Virus record (IMG/VR): IMGVR_UViG_3300024262_006558
Span: 186,001-250,000 of that record
Strand: one strand, 5' to 3'
DNA: 64,000 nt
Shown here piece after piece: positions 14,019-48,971 of the stretch. Within the stretch, counting starts at the first letter, position 1. The number at the start of each line of letters is the position of its first letter. The notes under the pieces were generated by a model. The model was not told where the DNA came from, did no database searches, and worked only from the letters and a program-made list of their open reading frames with translations. The translations under genes were made by a program, and so were the position numbers.

Positions 14019-14453
14019 TTAATAAGGGACTGGTGATGTATATGTAACTTTCACAATGGAGTTTGAATTTATACTCCAATAAGAAGCATAATAATAATCT
14101 CCCGTGACTAGCATCCAATTAGGGCCTATAACTATACCGTCTATTGTAATAGTGTAAGAAGGGATGTAAGTACCCATCTTTACCCATTGATTGTTTATTT
14201 TATTATAACTTTGATTGTAAAAATATACGTAATAGTAGTATACATAAATATACTTACCATTATAAAACATTTCATATGTATTTACAGATCTATCTACCTG
14301 ATAAGCTGTTTGCCCATACGAGTAAGAGTTAACCCAATTCTTTGAACCCTGAACTTTAGAAATATAGCGTACAGTGGATACTTGAGCATGGCCCAAGAAT
14401 CCTATAAAAAATAACGCTATAAATAATATAAGTTTAGAGATCGTAGATTTCAT
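14019..14453 (-). CDS. Secreted Tyr-rich hypothetical protein
   Basis: Signal peptide MKSTISKLILFIALFFIGFLGHA|Q. Confidence 0.6.
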   Translation of the reverse strand: MKSTISKLILFIALFFIGFLGHAQVSTVRYISKVQGSKNWVNSYSYGQTAYQVDRSVNTYEMFYNGKYIYVYYYYVYFYNQSYNKINNQWVKMGTYIPSYTITIDGIVIGPNWMLVTGDYYYASYWSINSNSIVKVTYTSPVPY

Positions 14454-16683
14454 CGTATCCGTTATTATGTGTAAAGTCTTTAATTAGCATGCCAGCAACA
14501 GAGTCAGCCTCATTTTCAATTTCACCCCCAATGTTCTGAACCTCTTCACCTAAGTTAAATTTACCTATTTCAATCTGTCTATTGTGAGTGAGTTCATGCG
14601 CTATAGATCTGCAAATATCAACTAGTGATCTACCTTGATAATTTATATGGTTGGAGTTCTCACTTGGAACATAAGACGCAGTAGTTTTAATGTACTCATC
14701 TCTTCCGTTTCTAAAGTGTATAGTAATAGGATTTTCCATACCAACCTTCAAACAGACAAATTCAACGAAATCCCTTAACAGCTCCATCTTTTCAGGAGTC
14801 ATCCCATCCCCTTTGTGGAAGAAAATAGAATTATCTCCATTTTTGGAATTATATTTAACCAATCTATCAACAGGTATATTTGGATTAAGAGGCCAATTTA
14901 TTCTTTTCCCACTAGGAGCAGAGTAAGACATCTCAGCACCCTCAAGCACTAAAGCTTGCGGTTTAAATTTGCTTGCATATCTTTTACCCATTCCTGGCTT
15001 AAGATAAGCTATAGTAATGTGCGGTTGATAGTTAGGGTAATCATTACTATGAGAAAACCCTTCCTTCATCACACCATTTAATCTATGAAGCTCTTTCCCA
15101 TCCACATCAAATTTTAGGACGTCATATTTATCCCCCTCGAAGCAAGACGCTCCTTTAACTTCTATTTTAAGAGGCCCTGAGCAATTATCTCTAGTTTTCT
15201 GTATAATGTCTTCGTAATCTATTTCATCATCGTGAAAGCCAAATAAAACAGTTGCATGAGGATCTTTTTCTAAGCCGAATCCAGGCTCATCTTCATACAG
15301 ATCTCCCTCTTCTATTTTAGATAATATTTTACTATCCCATGTAGGAATATCCATTTGCAACATTAAACACCCTTTTTCATACTTGTGATTTACACTACTC
15401 TCATTTAGATCTCCAGATTCCATTCTATCAAGCTTGTCGTAATATTTAGGATCTTCTAATAAATGATCTAAAGCTATTTCTTTAGCCATAGCCGCATCAT
15501 CAGTGTGCTCCATTTCTACTTGAACCCCTTTGTGTAATTGCGATATTATTTCCCATGAAGAAACACCATGCTTATTTGCGATGTCCTCATAAGTCATATC
15601 ATCAGATAAACCTCCAGGCACCATGTCTTCTTTAACTTTCTCTGGAAGCCCATCGTGATCGGTAGACGCGAAGTCTTCCACATCTTTATGACTCATATCT
15701 TTAGCCGCTTTACGAGCCTTTTTAGATGCTTTACTTAAAGGTATTTCTCCTAATTGTAAACCTCTAACTATACCAAAGAATCTCTGCTGAGATTTACTAC
15801 TTGATTCTTCATCTATAAGTTTAAACGCTTCAGCAAAGTCTTCATCTAAAGTGAGAGACTTGTCGAAAGAATTTATTTTAGTATCGGACAATTTTTCAAG
15901 GTAACCGCTATTTCTCAATGTTTTGAACGCGAGGTTTTCAACTGAGTATTCTCCCGCTGAAGAAAGTCCAGTTTGCCTCATTTTCCTAATCTTCTCTTTG
16001 ATAGCATCTGATTCACTCTCTCTTTCTTCATCATCTTTGATTCCAGCAAGAGCGTTAATCATATCAGCCATCATTTGAGATTTTTTTCTTACAGATTCTT
16101 TGTCTACTTTGACGTTTTCTTTCTCTGGCTTAACTATCCAGTCATCATTTTTAATAGAATAAATTCCAGAAGAATGATGCTCTTCTCTTTCATCCTGCAC
16201 ATACAATTCAACATCATGCCCTTTAACAGTGATGTCATGCTTCAAACCCCATAGAGCTTTCTGTATATCAAAGTAATCTCTTACAAATTCAGTGTTATCA
16301 TCGACATCATCAAAGTTGATGACGATGTGCAAGTCAATATCACTCGTATCAGTCCAGTTGTAGTTTGCCATACTACCAGTAAAGATAACGTCTTTAATAG
16401 GAGCTTTAAGACCAATGGATTCAATAAATTTAACAGCAATCTTCTTTAGCTGCTTTCTAATTTCAGACTTTAATTTATCTTGGTCATCCCATAATTCTCT
16501 ATTAAGATCATCCTGCACCCCAGAAGGCACAAACTTTTCTAAAGATTTATCAACAGCCTCACCAATCTCTTTTTTACTTTCACCTCTTCCTTTGTGGAAT
16601 CTGTAATAAGGATTATTTCTCCATTTAGCGCTATTAGCTGAAGCTAATGACATGTTTTTTGGTTGTTCGTTAATTCCAGGCAT
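14434..16683 (-). CDS. Multidomain protein: Pol-beta-like nucleotidyltransferase + DUF3008-like + DUF5661-like + 2H phosphoesterase + HExxH domain
   Basis: GSMANYNWTDTSDIDLH; SKSQQRFFG..DFASTDHDGLPEKV; VEMEHTDD..EIALDHLLEDPKYY; PHATV and PHITI; AHELTH. Confidence 0.75.
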   Translation of the reverse strand: MPGINEQPKNMSLASANSAKWRNNPYYRFHKGRGESKKEIGEAVDKSLEKFVPSGVQDDLNRELWDDQDKLKSEIRKQLKKIAVKFIESIGLKAPIKDVIFTGSMANYNWTDTSDIDLHIVINFDDVDDNTEFVRDYFDIQKALWGLKHDITVKGHDVELYVQDEREEHHSSGIYSIKNDDWIVKPEKENVKVDKESVRKKSQMMADMINALAGIKDDEERESESDAIKEKIRKMRQTGLSSAGEYSVENLAFKTLRNSGYLEKLSDTKINSFDKSLTLDEDFAEAFKLIDEESSSKSQQRFFGIVRGLQLGEIPLSKASKKARKAAKDMSHKDVEDFASTDHDGLPEKVKEDMVPGGLSDDMTYEDIANKHGVSSWEIISQLHKGVQVEMEHTDDAAMAKEIALDHLLEDPKYYDKLDRMESGDLNESSVNHKYEKGCLMLQMDIPTWDSKILSKIEEGDLYEDEPGFGLEKDPHATVLFGFHDDEIDYEDIIQKTRDNCSGPLKIEVKGASCFEGDKYDVLKFDVDGKELHRLNGVMKEGFSHSNDYPNYQPHITIAYLKPGMGKRYASKFKPQALVLEGAEMSYSAPSGKRINWPLNPNIPVDRLVKYNSKNGDNSIFFHKGDGMTPEKMELLRDFVEFVCLKVGMENPITIHFRNGRDEYIKTTASYVPSENSNHINYQGRSLVDICRSIAHELTHNRQIEIGKFNLGEEVQNIGGEIENEADSVAGMLIKDFTHNNGYDEIYDL

Positions 16684-18926: not shown

Positions 18927-20501
18927 TTACTTAACCGTTTTCAGTGTGATATTTGCAAATTGATCAGGTGCATACTTCTGAGCATTTTGCGGATCATTAG
19001 CATATTCAATGTCCCCAATTTTAGAAGTTGTATTTACTCCTGTAATTCTTTTAAGAATATCTGGATCTTTAACTTTAAGATCAACTAGAACTTGTTTTAA
19101 TAAAGCATCAGCTCTATCTTGCGCAAGCATTTTGTTGTTATCTACTCCAGCTTGTCCTGGAAGAGATTTAAAATTGTCACCAAGATTGTTGTTATCCTTA
19201 GTGTTGTCATATGATGTAGGAACTTGAGAAGAGTTACCATGAACCGTAATCTCAAATTTAGCTTCAGGATACTTTTCTACAAATACTTCAATTTGATTAA
19301 TCATTTCTTTGTAAGAATCCTTGTCAGTTTGAACGGTTGTTCTATTGTATTTGAAAAGATCATTCTCTTTAACAGACAGCTGTTCTGTAGAAGTTGAATC
19401 ACCTGGAGTCTCATTGCCTTCTATCCCTTTTCCATAAACCAATCCAATACTAATACTATTTCCCTTTACAGAAAAAGAAGTTTTACCTGGAGCTGCAATG
19501 AAATCTTTTGAACCTCCTTTTAATTTAGCAAAGTTAACGCCTTTTTTATCATAAAACGCGTTCTTGTTTCTAGGATTAGATTTTATTATGAAAAAACCTA
19601 CAAACTGCATAGTTTCTCCATTATTTGTTATCTCTTGAGGATAATCTGAAACCGTATATATAATAGGGGATTCATCCTCACTAGCAACAACTACATAATT
19701 TTTATTATCAGTAACACCTTTTACTGTATCTGTTTTATAAGCGTCATAGCTTCTTGATAATTGATGACCCCATCCAGCGCTTAACTTCTCTGATGTCTTC
19801 AACGTATAAGGAACTGCTATACCTCCAATATCGCTTCCATATTGATAATCTGAAACATCAATAGAAGCTTTCATGTCACTAATATTTTGATTAGTTAATG
19901 TATCTTGTACGAACATACCTCTTACAATACCAAAATTAAACACATCAGGTTTACCTTGAACATCAATACCTGCTTTCTCAGCAGCCATTTCTATTTTATC
20001 AGGATCAATACCAGCTTGTTCTAATTGTTGAGCGCTTGCTAAATTAGTACCTAACAAGTTAGCCATTATAGCAACAGTAAGCACTCCTCTTCTAAGATAC
20101 CTTTTAAGAACGTCAGTAATAGCCTCCTCAAGCATGCTAACCTCTTGTATTTTGTGCATTTCTGCCTCTAGAGCTAATTTAATTTCATTAAACACTCTTT
20201 CTTCTTGTATAACCTCAGACAAAATATCTCTGTCACCATCTGGCACAACTTGGTATTCAACCAAGTTGGAGAATCTACTTGTTTGTTCTGTAGGTATTAA
20301 TTTTTGCTTAGGCTTAGCGTCTTCAGCAACAAATTTGTCATTAAATTCATAAGAATTAGTAACTATCTTACATTGCTCAGTAAGACTTTTTATATCATCA
20401 AGTGTGATGTTTTTAAGTTCCTGGCGTTTTTTATCCGCTTCTTCTTTAAGCATTTGTCTTGCTTCAGAAATTACGTGCTTTTCGAAATCTTCTCTGTTCA
20501 T
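18927..20501 (-). CDS. Hypothetical protein with C-terminal OmpA-like domain
   Basis: LFKYNRT..ITVHGNSSQVP..NKMLAQDRA resembles the OmpA_C fold; E-rich N-terminus. Confidence 0.55.
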   Translation of the reverse strand: MNREDFEKHVISEARQMLKEEADKKRQELKNITLDDIKSLTEQCKIVTNSYEFNDKFVAEDAKPKQKLIPTEQTSRFSNLVEYQVVPDGDRDILSEVIQEERVFNEIKLALEAEMHKIQEVSMLEEAITDVLKRYLRRGVLTVAIMANLLGTNLASAQQLEQAGIDPDKIEMAAEKAGIDVQGKPDVFNFGIVRGMFVQDTLTNQNISDMKASIDVSDYQYGSDIGGIAVPYTLKTSEKLSAGWGHQLSRSYDAYKTDTVKGVTDNKNYVVVASEDESPIIYTVSDYPQEITNNGETMQFVGFFIIKSNPRNKNAFYDKKGVNFAKLKGGSKDFIAAPGKTSFSVKGNSISIGLVYGKGIEGNETPGDSTSTEQLSVKENDLFKYNRTTVQTDKDSYKEMINQIEVFVEKYPEAKFEITVHGNSSQVPTSYDNTKDNNNLGDNFKSLPGQAGVDNNKMLAQDRADALLKQVLVDLKVKDPDILKRITGVNTTSKIGDIEYANDPQNAQKYAPDQFANITLKTVK

Positions 20502-20625
20502 AGCTATTAATTGATCAATAATCGCAAACCGATTTACTTATAAATATCAAAAAAAACAGTATATTCAACTTTTTAATTTTTTTGTTGTAATTTGTTTTTT
20601 CACTTTCCTTTCTTTAGATTTAAGC

Positions 20626-20811
20626 ATGGAATTTTCAGATTTAAATATAGACACATTTATTGAGAATAAAGATAGTAAATTACAAGTGAAATATCACTGT
20701 GTTTGCGATGATCCAGAGAACCCTAAATTCACATTATTAAACGAGTCTGGAGAAGTAGTTTTTAAAACTCTTCAGGAAATAAAAAAAGAAGAATATGTCA
20801 AATGTAGTTGA
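20626..20811 (+). CDS. Hypothetical protein
   Basis: ORF track. Confidence 0.5.
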   Translation: MEFSDLNIDTFIENKDSKLQVKYHCVCDDPENPKFTLLNESGEVVFKTLQEIKKEEYVKCS

Positions 20812-21091
20812 AAGCTTACAGAAAATACTTGATAAGTCTAGCGGTAATGGTTTTGAGTTTAGAACTGGTTCAGAAATAACAAACATAGAATATTTAGGTT
20901 TTGGTAGATTTGATGTTGGGATAATACCTTCAGATTCAGACACGGAAATTTCTTTTATTTTTCATTGGAACGAGTTGTTTTTTAATCACAATTTTGCTAA
21001 ATGTTTTTTCGGAGAAGACTCGTATAAACAACAGTTGCAAATTATGGTGCTGGAAGAGAATCCTTTAGAGTATCTTTTGAAATTAATCTAA
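20795..21091 (+). CDS. Hypothetical protein
   Basis: ORF track. Confidence 0.55.
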   Translation: MSNVVESLQKILDKSSGNGFEFRTGSEITNIEYLGFGRFDVGIIPSDSDTEISFIFHWNELFFNHNFAKCFFGEDSYKQQLQIMVLEENPLEYLLKLI

Positions 21092-21148
21092 ACATTTAGC
21101 AACAATTAATTGTTTTTTTCGTTTTATAATTGAACGTGCAATTAATTT

Positions 21149-21667
21149 ATGTTAAAAAAGATTATAAGTGGAGGTCAGACTGGGTCTGACCTAGGAGGAT
21201 TAGAAGCAGGTAAAGATCTCGGTCTAGAAACTGGCGGAACGGCTCCAGAAGGCTGGCTGACAGAACTAGGCCCACAAAAAGAGCTACTACAACAGTATGG
21301 TTTATCTGAAGGTCCAAAGGATGTTAGAAAGTTTGTTAAAAGAACAATGCTGAATGTAGATTGTTCTGATGCTACTATTGCATTTAGATTGAAGAAAAGC
21401 CCTGGCACTGATAAAACCATTGGATATGCTCACAATAAAAAGTGGGAATATCCAAATGACATCTTGGAAACAAGCAATTATAAACCTATATTTGTCATCC
21501 ATAATCTCAACGCTGTGCCTATTAGAAAAATTGCCGCATGGTTAATAGATAATAAAGTTAAAGTTCTTAACGTTGCTGGGCATAGGGAAAAATCTTGGCC
21601 AGGACTACAACAGATAACAAGAGAAATAATTAAAGCAATATATTATGAGCAAAAATCTAAAGCCTAA
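21149..21667 (+). CDS. SLOG-superfamily protein ('putative molybdenum carrier' family)
   Basis: KKIISGGQTGSDLGGL, TGGTAPEGW, RTMLNVDCSDAT, VLNVAGHRE. Confidence 0.8.
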   Translation: MLKKIISGGQTGSDLGGLEAGKDLGLETGGTAPEGWLTELGPQKELLQQYGLSEGPKDVRKFVKRTMLNVDCSDATIAFRLKKSPGTDKTIGYAHNKKWEYPNDILETSNYKPIFVIHNLNAVPIRKIAAWLIDNKVKVLNVAGHREKSWPGLQQITREIIKAIYYEQKSKA

Positions 21668-23162
21668 AGATTGTGCAGTTCCATCCGCTTCAGCACCTAT
21701 GGTAGCTGATGCATATGAATACACTATGGCGGAAGCCAATATTGTAAACCAAATAACAGGAATCAAGTCTATATTCAACGCAGCCTTAAGAGGTATGCCA
21801 ACTAATAAGGTAGTTGGAGAGTTTGAGCATAAAGGTATTAAATACCCTGAGTTGCAAAAAAGGAGCTTCATGATTAATTGCGGACTTGAACAAGTACTAG
21901 CTCTTGTGACAAACACAACCCCAGAGGGGATGGTAGTCATAAAGAATTATTTCAAAGACATTCTAGGGAACAAAAATCAAGAATTTCTAGATTGGATTGA
22001 GCAATTTTCATTCAAAGGCGATTTATATGCCATGGATGAAGGGATTCCATTTTTCTCTCATGAGCCACTAGTTAAAGTGGTTGATGATTTTGAGAGCGGT
22101 CAATTATTCGAAAGCGTAATACTATCGGTCCTTAATAGGGAAATAAATGTAGCAACTACCGCACATGACGTTTATAATGCATGCAAGGATAAGGTGTTGC
22201 TGGAAGGAGCTTCTCGTAGAGCAATGTCTCAACAGGATGCGATAATGCTGTCAAGAGCAGCTTTAATAGGCGGATTCACAGCAACTTCAAATGTGGGATA
22301 TGGAATTCAAAACGATACAAAAGTAGGGGGTACTCACGGCCATTCTTACGTATTGCTTTATGGAAGCGAATACGAAGCTTTTACAGCGCAAGCAAAACTG
22401 CATGGCGATAACACCACTTTCCTTTTAGATACTTATGGAAACGTCAAGAGAGCCATGTTTATAGCGCTTATAGTAGCGGAAGAGCAAGGTTTAAACCATT
22501 GGAAGTACAGATTAGATAGCGGAGACCTACTAAAGCAAGCTATATGGATCCATAGCGCTATGAAAAAGTGCAATTTCAAAAGGAATCAATACGACATTGT
22601 AGCTAGTGATGATCTTAATGCGGGTAAAATCGCAGCAATAGAAGCTGGCGGAGGGGATATTGCATCATATCTAATGGGCACATTTCTAAGTATTCAATCG
22701 AAAGGTCCAGGTATTGTATTCAAGCTTACAGCAAGGGAAGGTGAAGAAGGTAGATGGATTCCTACAGCTAAGTATTCAGAGAACCCAGCAAAATCAACTA
22801 TTGGAGGAGATCTTCAAATTTACAGAATAGAAGGGTCTGATGGGTTCTATGTGAAAGACATAATCGCATTAGCTGATGAAGAAATAGGAGGGTTGATTAA
22901 AGAGGGGGAAAAGGCTAAAGGGTTATTGAAGCAAAGGATTCAAGGGGGTAAGTTAATATATCCAATACCTACTATATCTGAAATACAGCAAATAAGAGAT
23001 GAGGAGTTAGCTAAATTCAAAGATATTGAAAACTACCCTGTTTTTAGAAGCAATAAAGTTAAAGATACTCAGGATGAAATAAAGCGAGAGATTGACTCTC
23101 AAAATTCTAAAGTAATTATTCCTGAAAAATTCAGAAAAATATTTGAAGAAGAGTGTAAATAA
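21645..23162 (+). CDS. pncB: Nicotinate phosphoribosyltransferase
   Basis: ADAYEYTM (PncB-type DxYxxTM), EGASRR, ATSNV, GTHGHS, LLDTY, RLDSGDL. Confidence 0.85.
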   Translation: MSKNLKPKDCAVPSASAPMVADAYEYTMAEANIVNQITGIKSIFNAALRGMPTNKVVGEFEHKGIKYPELQKRSFMINCGLEQVLALVTNTTPEGMVVIKNYFKDILGNKNQEFLDWIEQFSFKGDLYAMDEGIPFFSHEPLVKVVDDFESGQLFESVILSVLNREINVATTAHDVYNACKDKVLLEGASRRAMSQQDAIMLSRAALIGGFTATSNVGYGIQNDTKVGGTHGHSYVLLYGSEYEAFTAQAKLHGDNTTFLLDTYGNVKRAMFIALIVAEEQGLNHWKYRLDSGDLLKQAIWIHSAMKKCNFKRNQYDIVASDDLNAGKIAAIEAGGGDIASYLMGTFLSIQSKGPGIVFKLTAREGEEGRWIPTAKYSENPAKSTIGGDLQIYRIEGSDGFYVKDIIALADEEIGGLIKEGEKAKGLLKQRIQGGKLIYPIPTISEIQQIRDEELAKFKDIENYPVFRSNKVKDTQDEIKREIDSQNSKVIIPEKFRKIFEEECK

Positions 23163-23173
23163 ACATTATTATT

Positions 23174-23776
23174 ATGGATAAATTAAATATAAAAAAAGAA
23201 GAAACGGTTTTTGACAATTACTTTCAAATAGTTCAAGCTGATATTGAAGTAGGGAAAGGCGATGGCGCTAGGATTATTAAGCGTTTAAAACTTGACAGGC
23301 CTGACGCTGTATCTGTGTTAATTTTTAATTCTGACACAAATGAGTTTGTTTTGGTAAAACAAAATAGGTATCCTATTGTAGCTAAAAATGGAAACGATCC
23401 AATCTATGAAACACCAGCGGGTATTGTAGATCCAGGTGAAGAGCCAATAGAGGCTGCTATTAGAGAAACTAGGGAAGAGGTTGGGTATGAAGTTAAAGCT
23501 GACAATATGGATCTTTTCCGTGAATACTATTCTGGGGTAGGTTATTCTTCTGAAAGAATTTTTCTTTATTTCACAACTGTCACCAACAAAGATAGAGTGG
23601 AAGAAGGCGGGGGTCTAGAAGATGAAGGGGAATTCCTTGAAGTTATACATGTTTCAAAAGATGAAGTGTTTAGAATGTTAGACACAAATGAGATAGTCGA
23701 TGGTAAAACAATCATTTCTCTTTTCTTTATAAGAACGGCTCTTATGGATGCTGAAATCGAAAATCTAAACGGATAA
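23174..23776 (+). CDS. Nudix hydrolase, ADP-ribose pyrophosphatase family
   Basis: Nudix box AGIVDPGEEPIEAAIRETREEVG; GGGLEDEGE; IVDGKT. Confidence 0.9.
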   Translation: MDKLNIKKEETVFDNYFQIVQADIEVGKGDGARIIKRLKLDRPDAVSVLIFNSDTNEFVLVKQNRYPIVAKNGNDPIYETPAGIVDPGEEPIEAAIRETREEVGYEVKADNMDLFREYYSGVGYSSERIFLYFTTVTNKDRVEEGGGLEDEGEFLEVIHVSKDEVFRMLDTNEIVDGKTIISLFFIRTALMDAEIENLNG

Positions 23777-23780
23777 TAAA

Positions 23781-23984
23781 ATGTCAAACATAACGTTATT
23801 TAGCATGAGTATGGGGGCTTTATGGTCCGCATACTCATGGCTTGTTATTGGCGACTCGTTAGTTTGGGGATGGAAAATTCCAATAGGAATAGTTGTGTGC
23901 GTGATTTCTCAAGCGTTAATTGAGATTTCTTTAAACGGTTTAGGTATTTTAATCCAAATGTTATGGAAAAAAATAAGAAAATAG
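23781..23984 (+). CDS. Small membrane protein
   Basis: Two hydrophobic segments. Confidence 0.55.
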   Translation: MSNITLFSMSMGALWSAYSWLVIGDSLVWGWKIPIGIVVCVISQALIEISLNGLGILIQMLWKKIRK

Positions 23985-24604
23985 GATTATATTTTGGATC
24001 ATTTAACCCAATAACTAATGCTCACATAATGGTATCTTTACAAGCTATAGAGTATAAAAATAAATTCGAATTAGATGAAGTTTGGTTTGTGGTTTCTCCG
24101 CAAAACCCTCACAAGGACCCAATCGATCTCGCCCCTGTAGAAGATAGAGTGAAAATGATAAGGGGTGCAATAGAGGATATAGGTGGCTGGAGTGATGAAA
24201 ATCATCGTTTAAAATGCTGCACTAAAGAGCTTGAGCTTCCCTCACCATCTTACACCCACATTACATTCGAAGAACTTGAAAAAGAGAATCAAGATTGTGA
24301 ATTCGTTATTGTTTGTGGAGCTGATACTTACGACAATATTCCTAAATGGAAATATGGAGAAAGCATTTGGAAAAAATATAACTTTCTTATCGTTGAGAGG
24401 GGTGACAGTGGAAAGGGAGGGTTTTACCGAAAGTCTGGAGATGATTTTATTCCTGGTCATTTTAGCGTTTCAGCATCCCTAGTGAGAGAGCGTTTGAAAA
24501 ACGGATTGAATATAACTCCTCTGGTTTCAGAAACAGTAAAAAAGCACATATTAAATAATAAGCTTTACGTAAGTTCAGCATCAACAAGCAATGAACTTAA
24601 TTAA
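23963..24604 (+). CDS. nadD: Nicotinate-nucleotide adenylyltransferase
   Basis: IGLYFGSFNPITNAH, VWFVVSPQNPHK, PSYT, GADT..KWK, VSASLVRERL. Confidence 0.9.
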   Translation: MEKNKKIGLYFGSFNPITNAHIMVSLQAIEYKNKFELDEVWFVVSPQNPHKDPIDLAPVEDRVKMIRGAIEDIGGWSDENHRLKCCTKELELPSPSYTHITFEELEKENQDCEFVIVCGADTYDNIPKWKYGESIWKKYNFLIVERGDSGKGGFYRKSGDDFIPGHFSVSASLVRERLKNGLNITPLVSETVKKHILNNKLYVSSASTSNELN

Positions 24605-24926
24605 GCCTCATATATTATTTGTAATATCAGCATTCCTATTTAGCACACTGTTCATAGTTGTCTCAGTAACAACTATGACAGCTAATAGTAATATTAAAAC
24701 CTATCACAAAGACAATAAACAATTATTATCACTCTACATAGATGAATATAGTGATAGCTTATATTGCGCAGTAACTGTTGAGCAGATACAGGTTCATATA
24801 ATGTTTCTTAATAGAGTTTATGAAGAAGTTGATGTTGAAAATGCAACAATTGAGTACTTTCTCTCGTTATACGTTATAAGGTACGGATCAACCATATATG
24901 AAGAAGAGCATCAAATAAAAAATTAG
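24591..24926 (+). CDS. Membrane-anchored hypothetical protein
   Basis: N-terminal TM segment. Confidence 0.5.
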   Translation: MNLIKPHILFVISAFLFSTLFIVVSVTTMTANSNIKTYHKDNKQLLSLYIDEYSDSLYCAVTVEQIQVHIMFLNRVYEEVDVENATIEYFLSLYVIRYGSTIYEEEHQIKN

Positions 24927-24932
24927 AATAGC

Positions 24933-26747
24933 ATGAAATTAAAAACAGCAATTAGTCAGATTAAGCCAGTTACTGGAGATATTGATGGGAATACCCATCA
25001 AATAATCACGGACATTAGAAAAGCTATTAATGAAGGCGTTGATATTATCGTTTTTCCAGAATTAGCAATTACTGGATATTGTTGCGGAGCTCTTTTTGCA
25101 CAAAAACACTTCATTCAATATAATCTTGATTTCCTTTACAAAAAAATATTGCCAGAGGTGACTGGCGACCTTATTTGCGTAATAGGTCACGCGTCTTTCC
25201 ACAAAATAGATGAAGATAACCCTTTCGACAAAGGTGTTGAAAATCAAGACTTTGCATTATACAATTCATGTTCAGTCATTCAGAGCGGGGAGATATTGAA
25301 AAAATACAATAAAGTGTTTCTAGCAAATGATGGACATCATGAGGATAGAAAATATTTCACCCCAGGCATTCATAGCGATAATCTAGATGAAAACCCAATA
25401 GGGCTTTCCATTAAAGTCAAAGGTCAATACATACGTCTTAACACGCTTATTTGTGAAGACATATGGCAAAATCCTGAAGTGTATGATTATGCATTTGACT
25501 CAGTACACACGCAAGGTTTCCCATCAGTAACTATCGCATTAAATCATTCTTATTTCTATTATGGAAAAACAAAAGAAAGATTAAAGATTTGTGAAAAGAT
25601 AGCTAATACATTTGGGCATTCGGTTATCTATTGTAATCCAGTGGGGGTCGGAGACATTGTCAAAAACATCATGATATATGATGGAAACAGTTTTGCTATA
25701 GATGGGTTTGGTCAACTAGTATATCAGGCCCCAGCTTTTAAAGAGGAGTTAGGTATATTTAATCTTGACATCAAAAATGCTAATGAAACAATTAAAGAAA
25801 ATCACCCCAGCAAATACGAAGAAATATTTGACGCCCTAGTATTTACTCAAAAAGAATTCTTTAGAGTTTGCGGATTGAAAAGAGCTCAAGTTCACATAAG
25901 TGGCGGCTTAGATTCAGCGGTTGCTGCAGTTATTAGCGTAAAAGCTATGGGGGCTGAAAATTGCTTTTTCATCTCTAATCCAACATCCTTCAATGGCGAG
26001 GAAACTAGGAGGGCAGCTCAAAGTATATCTCAATTCTTAAGAGTTAAGTTGTGGTGGAATCCAACTGGTGAAATAGTTAATCTTATTGAAAGAGTTCATG
26101 AGAAATCTTTCAATGATAAACCTAATCAAACTGGATTAGCATCTATACACGCTGTCTCTAGAACTGTTCAAGGTTTAGCTGCGTCACACTTCTTCTCTAG
26201 CGGTATAGTAGCTGCAGGCAATCATACAGAGATAGTTTTAGGATGGGCTAGTTTCCATGATATAGGTAGCATTGGGGTCATGTCTATAATAGGAGACCTT
26301 ACTAAAGTTGAAGTGTTCGAGTTAGCTAAATATATTAATGAAAGACTTGAATTAGAAGTGATACCTTCAGAACTGTATGATGGAAGAATGAAGCCTGCGG
26401 CTGAATTGCCAGATGCAAATGAAGACCCGTTTGATTACTTTGTGGTAAGCGGTATATGCGCAGAGATTATAAGAAATAAAAAAGGTATTAAAGAATTAAC
26501 CGAAGCATTCAATACTAAAACTTTAACTGAAGAGTTTTTCCCGCTAGACTGGGATAATAAGACCGTTTATGAAAAGCTAACGTTAGAACAATTTAAGAAG
26601 CAGTTAGAGGGATGTTTTCACCTCGCTAGAGTGAGTGTTTACAAAGCCGCTCAAAGTGCTCCAGTTCCATTGATATCTAGATTTAGTAGAGGGTTCTCAA
26701 GTAGAGAGACCCTTATTAATCACTACAAAGGAGATTATAAATTATAA
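24933..26747 (+). CDS. nadE: Glutamine-dependent NAD+ synthetase
   Basis: Nitrilase triad motifs FPELAITGY, YNKVFL, ICED; synthetase motifs SGGLDS, GDLTK, PAAEL. Confidence 0.9.
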   Translation: MKLKTAISQIKPVTGDIDGNTHQIITDIRKAINEGVDIIVFPELAITGYCCGALFAQKHFIQYNLDFLYKKILPEVTGDLICVIGHASFHKIDEDNPFDKGVENQDFALYNSCSVIQSGEILKKYNKVFLANDGHHEDRKYFTPGIHSDNLDENPIGLSIKVKGQYIRLNTLICEDIWQNPEVYDYAFDSVHTQGFPSVTIALNHSYFYYGKTKERLKICEKIANTFGHSVIYCNPVGVGDIVKNIMIYDGNSFAIDGFGQLVYQAPAFKEELGIFNLDIKNANETIKENHPSKYEEIFDALVFTQKEFFRVCGLKRAQVHISGGLDSAVAAVISVKAMGAENCFFISNPTSFNGEETRRAAQSISQFLRVKLWWNPTGEIVNLIERVHEKSFNDKPNQTGLASIHAVSRTVQGLAASHFFSSGIVAAGNHTEIVLGWASFHDIGSIGVMSIIGDLTKVEVFELAKYINERLELEVIPSELYDGRMKPAAELPDANEDPFDYFVVSGICAEIIRNKKGIKELTEAFNTKTLTEEFFPLDWDNKTVYEKLTLEQFKKQLEGCFHLARVSVYKAAQSAPVPLISRFSRGFSSRETLINHYKGDYKL

Positions 26748-27068
26748 TAAAGTTTCTAAAAAAGCAACAACTTCTCTATAAGGAGAAGTGTTGCTTTTTT
26801 TACTATCTTTTAAAGTAAGCGTGACATAATTTAATATATCTTGTCCAGACAATTGCATTTCTTCACCTGAAGAATCAAACATATCCATCTCATAAAAACT
26901 AGCAGGTTTTTTCTCAAAGTAATTATCTTTAGCCTTCAATATTTGATCAATAGCCTGGTCATTCATTGGTGAAAGAGCTTGAGACATTTCTTCATCAGTG
27001 TAAGCTGGAGCTCCATACTCATTTAAGTAGCTCACTAATTCTTCTTTAACTATTTTTTTTAAATCCAT
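26742..27068 (-). CDS. Hypothetical protein with N-terminal KKIVKEE motif
   Basis: MDLKKIVKEEL. Confidence 0.6.
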   Translation of the reverse strand: MDLKKIVKEELVSYLNEYGAPAYTDEEMSQALSPMNDQAIDQILKAKDNYFEKKPASFYEMDMFDSSGEEMQLSGQDILNYVTLTLKDSKKSNTSPYREVVAFLETLL

Positions 27069-27316
27069 TATCTATTAATTTTTTTCCAAAATTTACGTAC
27101 ATGTCGTTTAATATACCCCCAAATCCCCTCTTCCGCATTTAGAATAGATAATTCTTTTTTTAGCTCAAATGCTAAATCATACTTCTCTTCTTCTACGCAT
27201 ATTGATATCCAGCTATTTAGAATAACTCTCCTCTTATCTTGAGTAAAGTTAGCCTTTTCCCTTACATACCACGTTAGGATATCCTCATTTTTATTTTTAT
27301 CAGATTCTACAATCAT
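27068..27316 (-). CDS. Small protein with UVR-like motif
   Basis: EEEKYDLAFELKKEL. Confidence 0.55.
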   Translation of the reverse strand: MIVESDKNKNEDILTWYVREKANFTQDKRRVILNSWISICVEEEKYDLAFELKKELSILNAEEGIWGYIKRHVRKFWKKINR

Positions 27317-29580: not shown

Positions 29581-30444
29581 ATGAAACAACTTAAGATACA
29601 GCACAAAATCTCTAATAGAGACTCAGAGTCAATTAACAAATATTTTACAGAGGTGTCTCAGATTCCAATGATTACAATAGAGGAAGAAAGAATCTTATCC
29701 GAAAAAATACAACAAGGAGATCAATTAGCAAAAAATAAATTGGTTAGCGCTAATCTTCGTTTTGTTATATCTGTCGCTAAACAATATCAAACTGGTAACG
29801 TATCTTTATCTGATGTAATTAATGAGGGCAATCTAGGGTTAATGGTGGCCGCAGAACGATTTGATCACACTAGAGGCTTCAAGTTTATTTCATACGCAGT
29901 ATGGTGGATTAGGCAAAGTATAATTGCATCAATCGACAAAAACAGCAGAGTTGTTAGGCTGCCAGGAAATCGCTCATCACTTCTTAATAAGATAAATCAA
30001 TTTGTAGACCTTAGAGTAAAGGAAACTGGAGAAATTCCAGGTCCAGACGAAATATGTCAACATGTTGAAATAGAGCATAGCACATATATTTTAATCATAG
30101 AAACTTCACTTCCTCACGCGTCTTTAGATAAACAATTGACGGAAGGAGAGTCTTCCACATTAGCTGATGTGATTGAATCTGATCTTTTTGAAGCTCCCGA
30201 CAACGATATAATCTGCGAAGGTAGAGACAAAAGAATAAATAATATGCTTTCTCAACTAAGCGTTCGTGATGCTGAAATAATCACATTAGCATTTGGAATT
30301 GGAGAAACTCAACCATGGACTCTTGAGGCTATTTCTGAAAAGCTAGGCTTATCTAGAGAGCGAGTTAGACAAATAAAAGAGAAGGCAATATCTCGATTAG
30401 GACGAACTCAAGGGTTGAGAAAGAATTATGCTGAATATTTATAA
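29581..30444 (+). CDS. RNA polymerase sigma70 factor (RpoD/RpoS family, Bacteroidota type lacking region 1.1)
   Basis: MKQLKI..NRDSESINKY, ANLRFVISVAKQY, NEGNLGL, GFKFISYAVWWIRQSI, LSRERVRQIKEKA. Confidence 0.92.
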   Translation: MKQLKIQHKISNRDSESINKYFTEVSQIPMITIEEERILSEKIQQGDQLAKNKLVSANLRFVISVAKQYQTGNVSLSDVINEGNLGLMVAAERFDHTRGFKFISYAVWWIRQSIIASIDKNSRVVRLPGNRSSLLNKINQFVDLRVKETGEIPGPDEICQHVEIEHSTYILIIETSLPHASLDKQLTEGESSTLADVIESDLFEAPDNDIICEGRDKRINNMLSQLSVRDAEIITLAFGIGETQPWTLEAISEKLGLSRERVRQIKEKAISRLGRTQGLRKNYAEYL

Positions 30445-30549: not shown

Positions 30550-30867
30550 ATGAATAAGTATCAAACACTAATTCAACAATTAGAAGAAAAAGGAGAAGGA
30601 GAAATGACCTGTTTTGGTCAGAGTATGAAACCTATCCTAAAAAGCGGAAGCACGCTTAAATTCAAGAAGCAGGAAACCTACGAAAAAGGTGATATTGTAT
30701 TCTGTAAAGTCAAAGGGCGATTTATAGACGCTCACAAGATCATTAAGACTAATAAGGTGAAAGGTTTTCTTATAGCCAATAATCAAGGTTGGGAAAATGG
30801 GTGGACTACAACTATTTACGGACGAGCAGTAGAAGCAACTCACAAAGGAGAAAGTAAGAAATTATGA
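30550..30867 (+). CDS. S24/S26 peptidase-like protein
   Basis: GQSMKPIL..KGDIVFCKV..AHKI. Confidence 0.65.
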   Translation: MNKYQTLIQQLEEKGEGEMTCFGQSMKPILKSGSTLKFKKQETYEKGDIVFCKVKGRFIDAHKIIKTNKVKGFLIANNQGWENGWTTTIYGRAVEATHKGESKKL

Positions 30868-31292
30868 GTGAAGAAAGAAAGAGTGTTGATATTAAACAAG
30901 TCATCGTCCTCAGGAAAGATTTAAAAAACCAGGAAGGTCATAAAATTAGAACGGGAAAGCTGGTAACTCAGGGTTCTCACGCCTCTAGTCAAGTGTTCTT
31001 CCAAAGAGGGATTGTAATAGAAGAGGGTGGGAATAAATTCTTAAAAATCCCATTAACCGATGAGATGGGAAAGTGGCTAGAAGACAGGTATGCAAAGATA
31101 ACTCTTAAAGTAGAAAGTGAAGAGCAGCTGCTTGACACCTATCAGCAAGCTCTTGACCAAGGACTTCCTTGCGCTTTAATACAAGATGCTGGTTTAACCG
31201 AGTTTAATGAGCCTACATATACAGCTATTGCTATTGGTCCAGCTCACAAAAATGATCTGGATAAAATTACAGGAGGGTTAAGTCTATTATAA
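30864..31292 (+). CDS. Peptidyl-tRNA hydrolase, Pth2 family
   Basis: KQVIVLRKDL, GKLVTQGSHAS, KITLKV, IQDAGLTEF, TAIAIGP. Confidence 0.9.
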   Translation: MSEERKSVDIKQVIVLRKDLKNQEGHKIRTGKLVTQGSHASSQVFFQRGIVIEEGGNKFLKIPLTDEMGKWLEDRYAKITLKVESEEQLLDTYQQALDQGLPCALIQDAGLTEFNEPTYTAIAIGPAHKNDLDKITGGLSLL

Positions 31293-44276: not shown

Positions 44277-44327
44277 AATCCTTTGTTTTGATTCACCAAT
44301 ATATACCACGAGTGGGATATTATGTAC

Positions 44328-45095
44328 TTACTCATAGAAGTTCAATTTATTTTGTAGTGCTACTAACATGTTAATATCTTGTATTGGGGTCATTGTATTT
44401 ACGCTCTCTATTTCTTTTGTTGATATAGGTGTTTTGTTTCTTTTTATATCTACAATCATAATAGTATTATCTAAAAATGAATGAGATATATTTATGACGT
44501 CTATACGTTTGTCTTTAACTATTATTGTGTTACCAATAAATTCATAGACAGGTAGGATTCCAGTATTTACTTTTACAGTATTTTTATTCTTATAAAAGTT
44601 CTTTTTAAATCTTGTTAAGTTTGGCACGTTACAAGTCGCTCTTTTACATAAGTGAATTGATTTTTTAACGTTATCTAGTGAAATATCTTTTACAAAGACG
44701 TTTCTTAGTGGCATATCATTTACATATATGGCTATTTTGTCTCCATACATAAAAGCGTTTACAGTAACGTTATTAAAAACAAATGTAGTGTGTTTAGATT
44801 CTCTATGTATGTTTATGCGTTCGATTTGTTTTTTACTTCTATATTCTATTTCAGAATCAATTTTACTTTTTACATATTCTAGGCTTGTTCCGTCAACAGG
44901 TTTAGGTGAATAGCATCCTGTTTGAAATGTGTAGTTTTTATATTTACCAACACTAACGGAATAATAAGGGTTGTCGATTGAGTTAAGCTTTAACCCATCC
45001 TTGTCAGTTATAGACACGCTATTGGAGATAGGCTCATCGTTCATAAAAATATCTACACCTCTATATGTTTCAATTACTGTTTTTTGATTAATCAT
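44328..45095 (-). CDS. Hypothetical protein behind repeat A
   Basis: 255 aa; its stop abuts the next repeat copy. Confidence 0.6.
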   Translation of the reverse strand: MINQKTVIETYRGVDIFMNDEPISNSVSITDKDGLKLNSIDNPYYSVSVGKYKNYTFQTGCYSPKPVDGTSLEYVKSKIDSEIEYRSKKQIERINIHRESKHTTFVFNNVTVNAFMYGDKIAIYVNDMPLRNVFVKDISLDNVKKSIHLCKRATCNVPNLTRFKKNFYKNKNTVKVNTGILPVYEFIGNTIIVKDKRIDVINISHSFLDNTIMIVDIKRNKTPISTKEIESVNTMTPIQDINMLVALQNKLNFYE

Positions 45096-45853: not shown

Positions 45854-45905
45854 TACATAGTTTCCCCTTGGGGGTATATATTATTGAATTTTAAAAGAAG
45901 ATATT

Positions 45906-46124: not shown

Positions 46125-46289
46125 TTAGAGCTGTTTTTTTATTTGTGTATCTCTGAATTTTTCCGCAACTGCGTAAACCTTATCAGATACAGAGGGAGAG
46201 ATTGAGGTCACAAAAGCTGAAAAGTAAACTTTCCTATAAGTACATAGTTTCCCCCTCGTGGTATATATTGGTGAATCAAATTTAAAGAC

Positions 46290-48894: not shown

Positions 48895-48971
48895 AAATAA
48901 GGTACATAATATCCCCCTCACCGTATATATTAGTGAATCAAAAGTTAAACAAAACCAAAACAAATACAATT

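What the first reader, a model, noticed from the sequence alone, without database searches (positions are those of the whole stretch)
21149..26747. Phage-encoded deamidated (Preiss-Handler) NAD+ salvage cluster with Nudix and SLOG genes
Seen: co-oriented SLOG protein, PncB-type PRTase, ADP-ribose-type Nudix hydrolase, NadD and Gln-dependent NadE behind one motif-C promoter. Established: PncB, NadD and NadE convert nicotinate + PRPP to NAD+. Several anti-phage systems (Thoeris, SIR2-type) deplete NAD+. The described phage NAD reconstitution pathways NARP1 (Adps + Namat) and NARP2 (Nampt + Nmnat) use the amidated route. Inference: this may be a distinct NAD-rebuilding counter-defence route, with the Nudix enzyme recycling ADP-ribose toward ribose-5-P/PRPP. 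No nicotinamidase or PRPP synthetase is visible in the window.
Basis: partly seen in the sequence, partly recalled or inferred. Interest (0 to 1): 0.7.

Follow-up and report, generated by a model that had tools for sequence, protein, structure and literature searches.

The report
Jumbo-phage nicotinate-route NAD+ salvage operon

Summary
The gene content is confirmed at the stated coordinates. Window 21149-26747 (+) holds tightly packed genes for a cpYpsA SLOG protein, a NaPRTase-type PRTase, a YffH/AdpP-type Nudix hydrolase, NadD and glutamine-dependent NadE. All catalytic motifs are intact. The 'motif-C promoter' could not be confirmed.

The PRTase is nicotinate-type. All seven NaPRTase active-site residues are kept, including Ser at the NAMPT Asp219 position. 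Its cellular sister clade sits in NrtR-pncB-pncA-nadE operons.

The order SLOG-PRTase-Nudix-NadD-NadE recurs in related phage contigs. The host record is a phage of 388.6 kb with a portal protein.

The genome outside the window encodes the 'missing' steps:
- a divergent nicotinamidase
- a Prs-family PRPP synthetase
- a PncC NMN deamidase
- an NAD+-dependent DNA ligase
- a microbial-type PARG

Together these form a complete deamidated pyridine nucleotide cycle that can start from nicotinamide and ADP-ribose.

This is not new in kind. Li et al. 2024 (PMC11662467) described 'NAD-jumbo phages' with pncB-nadD-nadE clusters. The three experimentally shown NARP pathways are all amidated, so a counter-defence role for this route is plausible but untested. 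Supplying the phage's own ligase is an equally good reason for the genes.

Verdict: a new member of a known kind, of moderate interest.

The parts
20626..20811 (+). 61-aa ORF, function unknown. It is co-oriented and may be the first gene of the transcription unit.
   Evidence: ORF list. No Pfam, NCBIfam, PHROG or PADLOC hit. A 61-aa gene sits in the same place in the closest relative. It follows the divergent intergenic region 20502-20625.
20795..21091 (+). 98-aa ORF, function unknown, co-oriented, 57 nt upstream of the SLOG gene.
   Evidence: No family hit. A 98-aa gene sits in the same place in the closest relative.
21149..21667 (+). cpYpsA-family SLOG protein (172 aa). It overlaps the PRTase gene by 23 nt. 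Biochemical function unknown.
   Evidence: PF12694, 2.8e-24. AF2 model pLDDT 96.9. 3IMK Z 22.8, then LOG, DprA, MCP, YpsA and ThsA-SLOG at Z 5.5-8.8. Invariant S7 G8 G9 Q10 G12 D14, N141 and G144. The same gene sits directly upstream of the PRTase in the relatives.
21645..23162 (+). Nicotinate phosphoribosyltransferase (PncB/NaPRTase type, 505 aa) of a divergent phage clade.
   Evidence: TIGR01513 1.5e-72 and NF006695 5.6e-75, both below the equivalog cut-offs. Best PDB match is 2F7F, E. faecalis NaPRTase, at 8.7e-44, with no NAMPT hit. Y24, S190, R191, H233, S234, R289 and K360 are conserved. The phage clade has 100/98 support and is sister to the cellular clade. The cellular clade sits in NrtR-pncB-pncA-nadE operons.
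23174..23776 (+). Nudix hydrolase of the nucleoside-diphosphate-sugar (YffH/AdpP, ADP-ribose-type) subfamily, 200 aa.
   Evidence: PF00293 6.4e-17. TIGR00052 85.7 bits against a cut-off of 79.55. The Nudix box is intact, read from the translation. Nearest PDB entries are NudK/YffH at 6e-21 and ADP-ribose pyrophosphatases at 3e-17.
23781..23984 (+). 67-aa hydrophobic ORF. Coding status is uncertain and it is not called in relatives.
   Evidence: ORF list and sequence. No family hit. The closest relative has an uncalled gap of about 190 nt here. L004 and L006 have no gap.
23963..24604 (+). Nicotinate-nucleotide adenylyltransferase NadD (213 aa).
   Evidence: TIGR00482 117.6 bits against a cut-off of 112.45. 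Nearest PDB entries are Firmicute NadD at about 2e-20. The nucleotidyltransferase motif reads T-N-A-H, and a C-terminal SxSxxxR-type motif is present. It is the only CTP_transf_like gene in the genome.
24591..24926 (+). 111-aa ORF, function unknown, between NadD and NadE.
   Evidence: No family hit. It is not similar to the GNAT gene that relatives carry at this position.
24933..26747 (+). Glutamine-dependent NAD+ synthetase NadE (604 aa: N-terminal nitrilase-type glutaminase plus C-terminal synthetase).
   Evidence: PF00795 1e-16 plus PF02540 3e-19. NF010588 1e-74. Glu (FPELAITGY), Lys (YNKVFL) and Cys (LICEDIW) contexts and the SGGLDS P-loop are read from the translation. PHROG 'NAD synthetase' 1.5e-41.
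26770..26789 (+). Terminator-like hairpin followed by a T-run, just after the NadE stop.
   Evidence: Consensus scan only. It lies within the 3' end of a convergent minus-strand ORF, so its function is unproven.

Best explanation
Window 21149-26747 is a phage-borne Preiss-Handler NAD+ salvage operon.

The inferred chemistry:
- The NaPRTase joins nicotinate to PRPP, giving NaMN.
- NadD adenylates NaMN to NaAD.
- Glutamine-dependent NadE amidates NaAD to NAD+.
- The co-transcribed Nudix enzyme most likely splits ADP-ribose into AMP and ribose-5-phosphate.

Genes elsewhere in the same 388.6-kb phage genome close the loop:
- A divergent nicotinamidase (G000 358842-359762) turns nicotinamide into nicotinate.
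- A Prs-family enzyme (G000 351257-352237) turns ribose-5-P into PRPP.
- A PncC-domain protein (G000 311256-311846) turns NMN into NaMN. NMN is the by-product of the phage's NAD+-dependent ligase (G000 353023-355080).

The phage therefore carries a full deamidated pyridine nucleotide cycle. It keeps NAD+ available during replication of a very large genome. Because it starts from nicotinamide and ADP-ribose, it should also buffer NAD+ breakdown by host NADase effectors.

What is shown: gene content, intact catalytic residues and conserved synteny. What is inferred: every enzyme activity, the substrate of the Nudix enzyme, the role of the SLOG protein, and any protection against defence.
For: - Family assignments and motifs.
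- NaPRTase active-site residues are invariant, including Ser234 at the NAMPT Asp219 position.
- Cellular sister-clade genes lie beside pncA and nadE under NrtR.
- The order SLOG-PRTase-Nudix-NadD-NadE is conserved in relatives at 56-78% PRTase identity. A more distant relative (47%) keeps PRTase-Nudix-NadD-NadE.
- Nicotinamidase: phmmer best hit is Pnc1 at 1.6e-8. D11, D54, H56, H145, K179 and C242 are invariant. The model has pLDDT 94.6, and the top 16 structural hits are all nicotinamidases.
- Prs scores 188.7 bits against a cut-off of 113.
- PncC scores 92.6 bits against a cut-off of 68.9.
- LigA and PARG are present.
- Phage identity: portal protein and others.
- Precedent: NAD-jumbo phages (PMC11662467).
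Against: - No activity, expression or infection data exist. The only run holding the sequence is a DNA metagenome.
- The PRTase, NadE and LigA score below NCBIfam equivalog cut-offs.
- The nicotinamidase is below the Pfam gathering score, 24.9 against 27 bits.
- The Nudix enzyme's nearest solved relative is the GDP-mannose pyrophosphatase NudK.
- The accessory genes lie 100-150 kb from the operon, so co-regulation is unknown.
- The route is long and costly in ATP compared with NARP1, so it may be too slow to outrun an NADase.
Confidence: 0.65

Rival explanations
1. Dedicated counter-defence: a fourth, deamidated NAD+ reconstitution pathway. On this reading the genes are kept mainly because they rebuild NAD+ from the nicotinamide and ADP-ribose released by Thoeris, DSR, SIR2-HerA or SEFIR effectors. 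The SLOG protein would act on ADPR-derived signals or products.
For: - The pathway can start from both NADase products using phage genes alone.
- The neighbourhood holds an Acb1-like 2H-phosphoesterase polyvalent protein at 14434-16683.
- Relatives insert ADP-ribosylglycohydrolase, or carry Macro (weak hit) and SIR2 genes, next to the cluster.
- NARP2 was first seen as ordinary salvage and later shown to counter defence.
- Viral YpsA-clade SLOG domains have been proposed to degrade cADPR-type signals (PMC9503650).
Against: - No experiment exists.
- No PADLOC or anti-defence family hit for the SLOG protein or the small ORFs.
- LigA plus PncC give a sufficient housekeeping reason for the genes.
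- The route has many steps.
- The host and its defences are unknown.
Confidence: 0.3
2. Pure cofactor supply. The genes only top up and recycle NAD+ for the phage's own NAD+-consuming enzymes, above all the NAD+-dependent ligase, or they complement a host with poor salvage. They give no meaningful protection against NADase defences.
For: - LigA, PncC and PARG are encoded in the same genome.
- Li et al. found that over half of NAD-jumbo phages carry NAD+-dependent ligase, and found phage-host pathway complementarity.
- The nicotinamidase gene lies near LigA both here and in a relative.
Against: - A ligase consumes only modest amounts of NAD+.
- An ADPR-type Nudix, a SLOG protein and, in relatives, an ADP-ribosylglycohydrolase inside the operon point to ADP-ribose traffic rather than to ligase by-products.
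Confidence: 0.3
3. The PRTase has shifted substrate. It would be a NAMPT-like or Namat-like enzyme using nicotinamide or ADPR-PP, with the Prs-like protein acting as an Adps. The cluster would then be a disguised NARP1/NARP2 variant.
For: - The PRTase belongs to a divergent clade that gets no PF04095 hit and falls below the equivalog cut-offs.
- Ser replaces the Leu or Thr that packs on the pyridine ring at position 190.
- A divergent Prs-family gene exists.
Against: - All NaPRTase active-site residues are kept, including Ser at the Asp219 position.
- NAMPT PHROG scores only 34.8 bits, against about 245 bits for NaPRTase models.
- The sister clade is operonic with pncA.
- NadD and NadE would be superfluous.
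- Prs lies 140 kb away and aligns to within about 20 residues of the end of one canonical PRPS chain (6NFE), so the C-terminal module that Adps lacks is probably kept.
Confidence: 0.05
4. The genes are cellular DNA: host flank of a 'provirus', or a mis-assembly.
For: IMG/VR labels the record 'provirus'. The same proteins occur on a 494-kb contig.
Against: - The operon lies mid-record (207-213 kb of 388.6 kb), among phage-type genes.
- The neighbourhood, including a sigma factor and an Acb1-like protein, is syntenic in several independent phage-like contigs.
- A portal protein, tail fibre and replication genes are present.
- The PRTase forms a phage-context clade separate from the cellular ones.
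Confidence: 0.03

Closest known systems
'NAD-jumbo phage' Preiss-Handler gene clusters (pncB-nadD-nadE, e.g. Kuafu_71; Li et al. 2024, Microbiome, PMC11662467)
   Same: - A jumbo phage above 200 kb with clustered pncB, nadD and nadE giving a complete nicotinate route.
- The genome also encodes an NAD+-dependent ligase.
- Phage pncA is mentioned in the paper.
- The host hint here (no Shine-Dalgarno use, Bacteroidota-like nicotinamidase) matches their Bacteroidota-infecting clade.
   Different: - Those phages come from animal gut and this one from a subsurface metagenome.
- No sequence relative was found in GenBank phages or IMG/VR.
- This operon adds a SLOG gene and an ADPR-type Nudix gene.
- The paper does not discuss Nudix, PRPP synthetase or PncC.
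- Both descriptions are computational only.
NARP2 (NadV/NAMPT + NatV NMNAT-Nudix of vibriophage KVP40; Osterman et al. 2024)
   Same: A PRPP-dependent PRTase followed by an adenylyltransferase, with a Nudix activity associated. It rebuilds NAD+ from a pyridine base.
   Different: - NARP2 uses nicotinamide directly through NMN and needs two enzymes.
- The base here is nicotinate, the intermediates are NaMN and NaAD, and an amidation step (NadE) and a nicotinamidase are needed.
- There is no NAMPT-family gene in this genome.
NARP1 (Adps + Namat)
   Same: It re-uses ADP-ribose and involves a PRPS-fold enzyme. A Prs-family gene exists in this genome.
   Different: - NARP1 pyrophosphorylates ADPR and couples it directly to nicotinamide.
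- ADPR here would be split by Nudix and only its ribose-5-P re-used.
- There is no Namat, and Prs is not adjacent to the operon.
NARP3 (PnuC + NadR; Sci Adv 2026, PMC13464706)
   Same: A phage-encoded route that restores NAD+.
   Different: NARP3 imports nicotinamide riboside and uses a kinase/adenylyltransferase. This genome has no PnuC and only one adenylyltransferase, of NadD type.
Cellular NrtR-regulated pncB-pncA-nadE-(Nudix/NMNAT) salvage operons, as in loci L008 and L009
   Same: The PRTase clade is sister to these. The same pathway logic applies, with a Nudix enzyme in the operon.
   Different: - The phage operon has no NrtR regulator and no pncA in the operon.
- Its NadE is only 24% identical and its Nudix belongs to another subfamily, so it is not a recent wholesale capture.
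YpsA-clade SLOG proteins paired with PRTases or NAD-salvage genes (Burroughs et al. 2015; Brzozowski et al. 2019, PMC6459960)
   Same: A SLOG gene directly coupled to a phosphoribosyltransferase gene in an NAD context.
   Different: This is the circularly permuted cpYpsA family, in a phage, next to a NaPRTase. No member of this family has a known activity; the only solved structure, 3IMK, is unannotated.

Membership tests
Preiss-Handler pathway (PncB, NadD, NadE) | Type II PRTase with the NaPRTase active site (Tyr, Arg, His-Ser, Arg, Lys) and Ser rather than Asp at the NAMPT Asp219 position | tested here: met
   Y24, R191, H233, S234, R289 and K360 are conserved in P0002. H233, S234, R289 and K360 are invariant in all 118 aligned sequences; Y24 and R191 vary or are gapped in at most two.
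Preiss-Handler pathway (PncB, NadD, NadE) | PRTase reaches the curated equivalog score for nicotinate PRTase | tested here: not met
   TIGR01513 scores 244.9 bits against a cut-off of 297.4, and there is no PF04095 hit. The protein belongs to a divergent clade.
Preiss-Handler pathway (PncB, NadD, NadE) | NadD-type NaMN adenylyltransferase | tested here: met
   TIGR00482 is above its cut-off. Nearest structures are bacterial NadD. Preference for NaMN over NMN was not tested.
Preiss-Handler pathway (PncB, NadD, NadE) | NAD+ synthetase with a glutaminase domain (Glu-Lys-Cys) and an ATP pyrophosphatase P-loop (SGGxDS) | tested here: met
   PF00795 plus PF02540. The motifs were read in the translation.
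Preiss-Handler pathway (PncB, NadD, NadE) | Measured conversion of nicotinate to NAD+ | not testable with these tools
   Needs enzyme assays or labelled-precursor tracing.
NAD-jumbo phage (Li et al. 2024) | Phage genome above 200 kb encoding every step of one NAD+ salvage or Preiss-Handler route | tested here: met
   The record is 388.6 kb with a portal protein. pncB, nadD and nadE are present.
NARP1 | Adjacent Adps (a PRPS-like enzyme lacking the C-terminal alpha11-alpha12 module) and Namat (NAMPT family) | tested here: not met
   No NAMPT-family hit in the genome. The Prs-like gene is 140 kb from the operon and aligns close to the C-terminus of one canonical PRPS chain, 6NFE. Prs versus Adps activity itself is unresolved.
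NARP2 | NAMPT (NadV) plus NMN adenylyltransferase | tested here: not met
   The PRTase is NaPRTase-type. It scores only 34.8 bits to the phage NAMPT PHROG.
NARP3 | PnuC transporter plus NadR | tested here: not met
   No PF04973 hit. The single adenylyltransferase is of NadD type.
Phage counter-defence by NAD+ reconstitution (functional class) | Restores NAD+ and rescues phage in cells with an NADase defence | not testable with these tools
   No experiment or transcript data; only a DNA metagenome holds the sequence.
Nicotinamidase PncA/Pnc1 (protein P0244, outside the window) | Asp-Lys-Cys catalytic triad plus Asp-His-His metal site on the isochorismatase fold | tested here: met
   D11, K179, C242 and D54, H56, H145 are invariant in the family. 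The top 16 structural matches are nicotinamidases.
Nicotinamidase PncA/Pnc1 (protein P0244, outside the window) | Pfam isochorismatase gathering score | tested here: not met
   24.9 bits against 27, and no genome-level hit. The protein has an insertion of about 70 residues.
ADP-ribose pyrophosphatase (Nudix) | Intact Nudix box and membership of the YffH/AdpP NDP-sugar subfamily | tested here: met
   Which NDP-sugar is preferred (ADPR or GDP-mannose) is not testable here.
SLOG superfamily, cpYpsA family | Pfam cpYpsA match and a SLOG Rossmannoid fold with a glycine-rich nucleotide loop | tested here: met
   PF12694 2.8e-24. 3IMK Z 22.8, with LOG, DprA, YpsA and ThsA-SLOG matches. The GGQxGxD motif is invariant.

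The most novel reading that the evidence does not exclude
The operon is the core of a fourth, deamidated phage NAD+ reconstitution pathway.
- A phage nicotinamidase, NaPRTase, NadD and NadE rebuild the pyridine half.
- Nudix and Prs recycle the ADP-ribose half into PRPP.
- The translationally coupled cpYpsA SLOG protein is a new enzyme or sponge that feeds the pathway. It might cleave or bind cADPR-type Thoeris signals, or release ribose-5-P from AMP.

On this reading a jumbo phage escapes NADase defences, including variants that defeat NARP1.
Probability: 0.2. Interest if true: 0.7.

Novelty: new member of a known kind. Interest (0 to 1): 0.42.

Why it matters
All three experimentally shown phage NAD+ reconstitution pathways use amidated intermediates. 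If the nicotinate route also protects phages, NAD+-depleting defences face a wider range of escape routes than now assumed. Defences tuned against NARP1, such as aRES, would then not stop such phages.

This genome is a compact test case because every step from nicotinamide and ADP-ribose back to NAD+ is phage-encoded. It also offers a first functional handle on the cpYpsA SLOG family and on a long, Bacteroidota-type nicotinamidase family.

If the genes only feed the phage's own ligase, the finding is an ordinary auxiliary metabolic module.

Tried and rejected
- **Near-identity and protein searches.** GenBank phages gave no DNA match, and PRTase hits were all 36% identity or less. Most of those were unannotated fragments; Bacillus phage G gp277 was a real one. 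Two scans of IMG/VR viral contigs, one with the protein and one with a clade alignment, found no relative.
- **Promoter.** Sigma-70 consensus matches were no more frequent than in shuffles. The genome-wide enriched upstream motifs are absent near the cluster. An alignment of upstream regions from relatives showed nothing conserved.
- **Riboswitch.** Rfam at permissive E-values found nothing relevant in 20300-27300.
- **The 111-aa ORF as a remnant** of the GNAT gene found in relatives: no similarity.
- **Wholesale capture of the cellular pncB-pncA-nadE operon.** Rejected, because NadE is only 24% identical and the Nudix is of another subfamily.
- **A general SLOG link to NAD salvage.** Two more distant cpYpsA homologues (47-50% identity) sit in virus-like contexts without NAD genes.
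- **PADLOC.** No hit for the SLOG protein or the small ORFs; the Nudix gave only a weak match, 22 bits, to a candidate-system model.
- **The first genome-level isochorismatase search was negative**. The nicotinamidase surfaced only when neighbours of LigA and Prs were scanned one by one.
- **A 'BRCT protein'** seen at the edge of locus L002 turned out to be the C-terminus of LigA.
- **The NadD N-terminal motif** recalled eukaryotic NMNAT from memory, but PDB matches are all bacterial NadD, so the idea was dropped.
- **No complex prediction was run**, because no binding claim is made.

Full report
**1. The observation**

The ORF list shows seven tightly packed, co-oriented ORFs between 21149 and 26747, with overlaps or gaps of at most 23 nt. 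Pfam and NCBIfam assign five of them:

| Window coordinates | Assignment | Evidence |
|---|---|---|
| 21149-21667 | cpYpsA SLOG | PF12694, 2.8e-24 |
| 21645-23162 | nicotinate PRTase | NAPRTase_N and _C domains; TIGR01513 1.5e-72; NF006695 5.6e-75 |
| 23174-23776 | Nudix, YffH/AdpP subfamily | TIGR00052, 85.7 bits against a cut-off of 79.55 |
| 23963-24604 | NadD | TIGR00482, 117.6 bits against a cut-off of 112.45 |
| 24933-26747 | glutamine-dependent NadE | CN_hydrolase + NAD_synthase; NF010588 1e-74 |

Two small ORFs of 67 and 111 aa inside the run, and two of 61 and 98 aa just upstream, have no family match.

Catalytic motifs read from the translations are intact:
- The Nudix box.
- A T-N-A-H nucleotidyltransferase motif in NadD.
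- The Glu/Lys/Cys contexts and the SGGLDS loop in NadE.

The gene content and coordinates are therefore confirmed. The 'motif-C promoter' is not:
- Consensus promoter matches are at the level of shuffled sequence.
- The strongly recurrent upstream motifs of this genome are absent from 18-30 kb.
- Relatives share no upstream motif.
- No riboswitch is present.

The transcription unit may start at 20626, after the divergent intergenic region.

**2. What genome this is**

The window is bases 186001-250000 of a 388,594-bp IMG/VR virus record. The same proteins also occur on a 494-kb contig. The genome encodes a portal protein (phrog_213, 6.4e-56), a tail-fibre protein, SbcCD-like proteins and a helicase. 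The window itself holds a sigma factor and a thymidylate synthase. The only public run holding the sequence is a subsurface metagenome.

Two observations hint at a Bacteroidota host, and neither proves it:
- Shine-Dalgarno cores upstream of genes occur at the random rate of 7%.
- The nicotinamidase described in section 5 has its closest named relatives in Bacteroidota.

**3. The PRTase**

The best solved relative is E. faecalis NaPRTase 2F7F (8.7e-44). No NAMPT chain matches.

The published NaPRTase active-site set is Y17, T162, R163, H205, S206, R262 and K333 in E. faecalis, equivalent to Y21, L170, R171, H213, S214, R318 and K396 in human (PMC4442680). The window protein has Y24, S190, R191, H233, S234, R289 and K360. 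Ser234 occupies the position where NAMPT has the nicotinamide-specifying Asp219. Apart from position 190 (Ser in the clade; Leu or Thr in canonical enzymes), the residues are conserved in both the clade and canonical NaPRTases. H233, S234, R289 and K360 are invariant in all 118 aligned sequences; Y24 and R191 vary or are gapped in at most two.

The protein belongs to a separate clade at 42-78% identity. This clade gets no PF04095 hit and is cut off sharply from canonical enzymes at about 30% identity. In a maximum-likelihood tree, the ten sequences that include all five with phage context form one clade with 100/98 support. That clade is sister to 39 others, two of them shown to be cellular by their context and three labelled DPANN archaea.

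Two cellular members sit in NrtR - PRTase - isochorismatase (PncA) - NadE - Nudix operons. In one of them the last gene also carries a weak cytidylyltransferase hit. This ties the clade to nicotinate made from nicotinamide. The phage NAMPT PHROG scores only 34.8 bits. A nicotinamide-only or Namat-like enzyme is therefore unlikely.

**4. Conservation**

Contexts of PRTase relatives:

| Relative | PRTase identity | Context |
|---|---|---|
| Logan contig, 54 kb | 78% | cpYpsA - PRTase - Nudix - NadD/GNAT fusion - 101-aa ORF - NadE |
| L004, L005 | 64% | cpYpsA - PRTase - Nudix - NadD - GNAT - NadE; CinA-domain gene upstream in L004 |
| L006 (marine metagenome) | 56% | cpYpsA - PRTase - Nudix - NadD - NadE; CinA upstream; Macro (weak) and SIR2 downstream |
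| L010 | 47% | no SLOG; 4HBT thioesterase and ADP-ribosylglycohydrolase inserted; GNAT between NadD and NadE |

GenBank phages and IMG/VR hold no close relative. Glutamine-dependent NadE is rare in GenBank phages. Agrobacterium jumbo phage Atu_ph07 has one, two genes away from a DprA-like (SLOG-superfamily) gene.

**5. The rest of the pathway is in the genome**

*PRPP synthetase.* A Prs-family gene lies at G000 351257-352237. It scores 188.7 bits on TIGR01251 against a cut-off of 113, and its best PDB matches are canonical PRPS.

*Nicotinamidase.* A genome-level isochorismatase search was negative. Scanning the neighbours of Prs then turned up a 306-aa protein at G000 358842-359762 with a sub-threshold isochorismatase hit of 24.9 bits against 27. 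The case that it is a nicotinamidase:
- Its best solved relative by sequence is yeast nicotinamidase Pnc1 at 1.6e-8.
- The catalytic residues D11, K179 and C242 and the metal ligands D54, H56 and H145 are invariant across 42 family members.
- The model has pLDDT 94.6.
- The 16 best structural matches are all nicotinamidases.
- Homologues at 37-41% identity in Bacteroidota MAGs are named nicotinamidase by their sources.
- Close relatives of the phage keep the gene. One relative carries two copies near Thg1 and LigA.

*Other NAD-related genes.*
- A PncC-domain NMN deamidase at G000 311256-311846 (TIGR00199, 92.6 bits against a cut-off of 68.9).
- An NAD+-dependent DNA ligase at G000 353023-355080.
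- A microbial-type PARG at G000 355091-355993 (PF10021, 142 bits).

*Absent.* NAMPT-family genes, PnuC, SIR2, a Macro domain by the PF01661 model (the PARG above has a macro-type fold), and a second adenylyltransferase.

**6. Mechanism**

Every step below is inferred from homology.

- Nicotinamide is converted to nicotinate by the nicotinamidase.
- Nicotinate plus PRPP gives NaMN (NaPRTase).
- NaMN plus ATP gives NaAD (NadD).
- NaAD plus glutamine and ATP gives NAD+ (NadE).
- ADP-ribose is split into AMP and ribose-5-P (Nudix), and ribose-5-P plus ATP gives PRPP (Prs).
- NMN released by the ligase is converted to NaMN (PncC).

This is a complete deamidated pyridine nucleotide cycle encoded by a phage.

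The Nudix substrate is the least certain enzymatic step, because its nearest solved relative is NudK, a GDP-mannose pyrophosphatase, with ADP-ribose pyrophosphatases next.

The SLOG protein is confidently a SLOG fold (3IMK Z 22.8; LOG, DprA, YpsA and ThsA-SLOG at Z 5.5-8.8), but it has no known activity. The literature already notes YpsA-clade SLOG genes paired with PRTases and NAD-salvage genes (PMC6459960). It has also proposed that viral SLOG domains degrade cADPR-type signals (PMC9503650). More distant cpYpsA homologues are not next to NAD genes.

**7. What it is for**

Two readings fit, and they are not exclusive.

*Cofactor supply and recycling for the phage's own needs.* Li et al. argue this for NAD-jumbo phages. 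The ligase, PncC and PARG in this genome fit it.

*Counter-defence.* In its favour:
- The route starts from exactly the two products of NADase effectors.
- An Acb1-like polyvalent protein lies 4.5 kb upstream.
- Relatives place ADP-ribose-processing genes in or beside the operon.
- NARP2 went from being seen as 'salvage' to shown counter-defence.

No data discriminate between the two. I commit to NAD+ maintenance as the function, with protection against depletion as a likely but unproven consequence.

**8. Novelty**

A full-text search found NARP1 and NARP2 (2024), NARP3 = PnuC + NadR (2026), and reviews up to November 2026. None included a deamidated route shown by experiment.

Li et al. 2024 did report 174 NAD-jumbo phages, some with a clustered pncB-nadD-nadE Preiss-Handler set, and they mention phage pncA. 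PHROGs already holds a phage 'NAD synthetase' family.

The finding is thus a new, divergent member of a computationally known kind. It adds a SLOG-Nudix operon architecture and a demonstrably complete cycle.

**9. Verdict**

Interest is moderate at 0.42, and the value lies mainly in a clean, testable candidate for a deamidated reconstitution pathway.

Noticed in passing
window 44293-63763, both strands but mostly +: A composite promoter-like repeat: AAGTACATAATATCC, about 6 nt of spacer, then CCGTATATATTGGTGA. It occurs about 27 times upstream of small genes in the right half of the window, and 54 and 79 times for the two halves genome-wide. This is probably a phage-specific promoter class. 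None lies near the NAD operon.
   Followed up: partly
window 14434-16683 (-): A 749-aa polyvalent protein. It combines a nucleotidyltransferase (NTP_transf_2/MTPAP-like), DUF3008, DUF5661 and a 2H-phosphoesterase domain that also matches the anti-CBASS Acb1 family (28.6 bits). Counterparts with the 2H/Acb1 or DUF5661 hits lie at the same side of the cluster in three relatives.
   Followed up: partly
genome G000 350258-359762 (outside the window; locus L003): A second NAD/ADP-ribose neighbourhood, all on the minus strand: polynucleotide kinase-phosphatase, Prs, NAD+-dependent LigA, microbial-type PARG, Thg1-like tRNA-His guanylyltransferase, a radical SAM protein and the divergent nicotinamidase.
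   Followed up: yes
window 23781-23984 (+): A 67-aa strongly hydrophobic ORF fills the 186-nt gap between Nudix and NadD. The closest relative has a gap of the same size with no gene called there. It could be a small membrane protein or non-coding spacer.
   Followed up: partly
whole genome G000: Shine-Dalgarno core motifs upstream of long ORFs occur at the random rate (7%). With the Bacteroidota-like nicotinamidase, this hints at a Bacteroidota host. IMG/VR labels the record a 'provirus' although its proteins also lie on a 494-kb contig, which may be over-trimming of a huge phage.
   Followed up: partly
locus L012 (Agrobacterium phage Atu_ph07, NC_042013.1 99486-102423): This isolated 490-kb jumbo phage has a glutamine-dependent NAD synthetase two genes away from a DprA-like (SLOG-superfamily) gene. 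It is a second, independent case of SLOG next to an NAD-synthesis gene.
   Followed up: no
window 30864-31292 (+) and 29581-30444 (+): A PTH2-type peptidyl-tRNA hydrolase (PF01981, 2.8e-28) and a phage sigma-70-family factor lie downstream of the operon. The sigma factor is syntenic in relatives.
   Followed up: no
locus L010 9315-11072: In a more distant relative the NAD operon carries an ADP-ribosylglycohydrolase (PF03747) and a 4HBT thioesterase in place of the SLOG gene. This suggests the operon is a hotspot for exchangeable ADP-ribose-processing genes.
   Followed up: no
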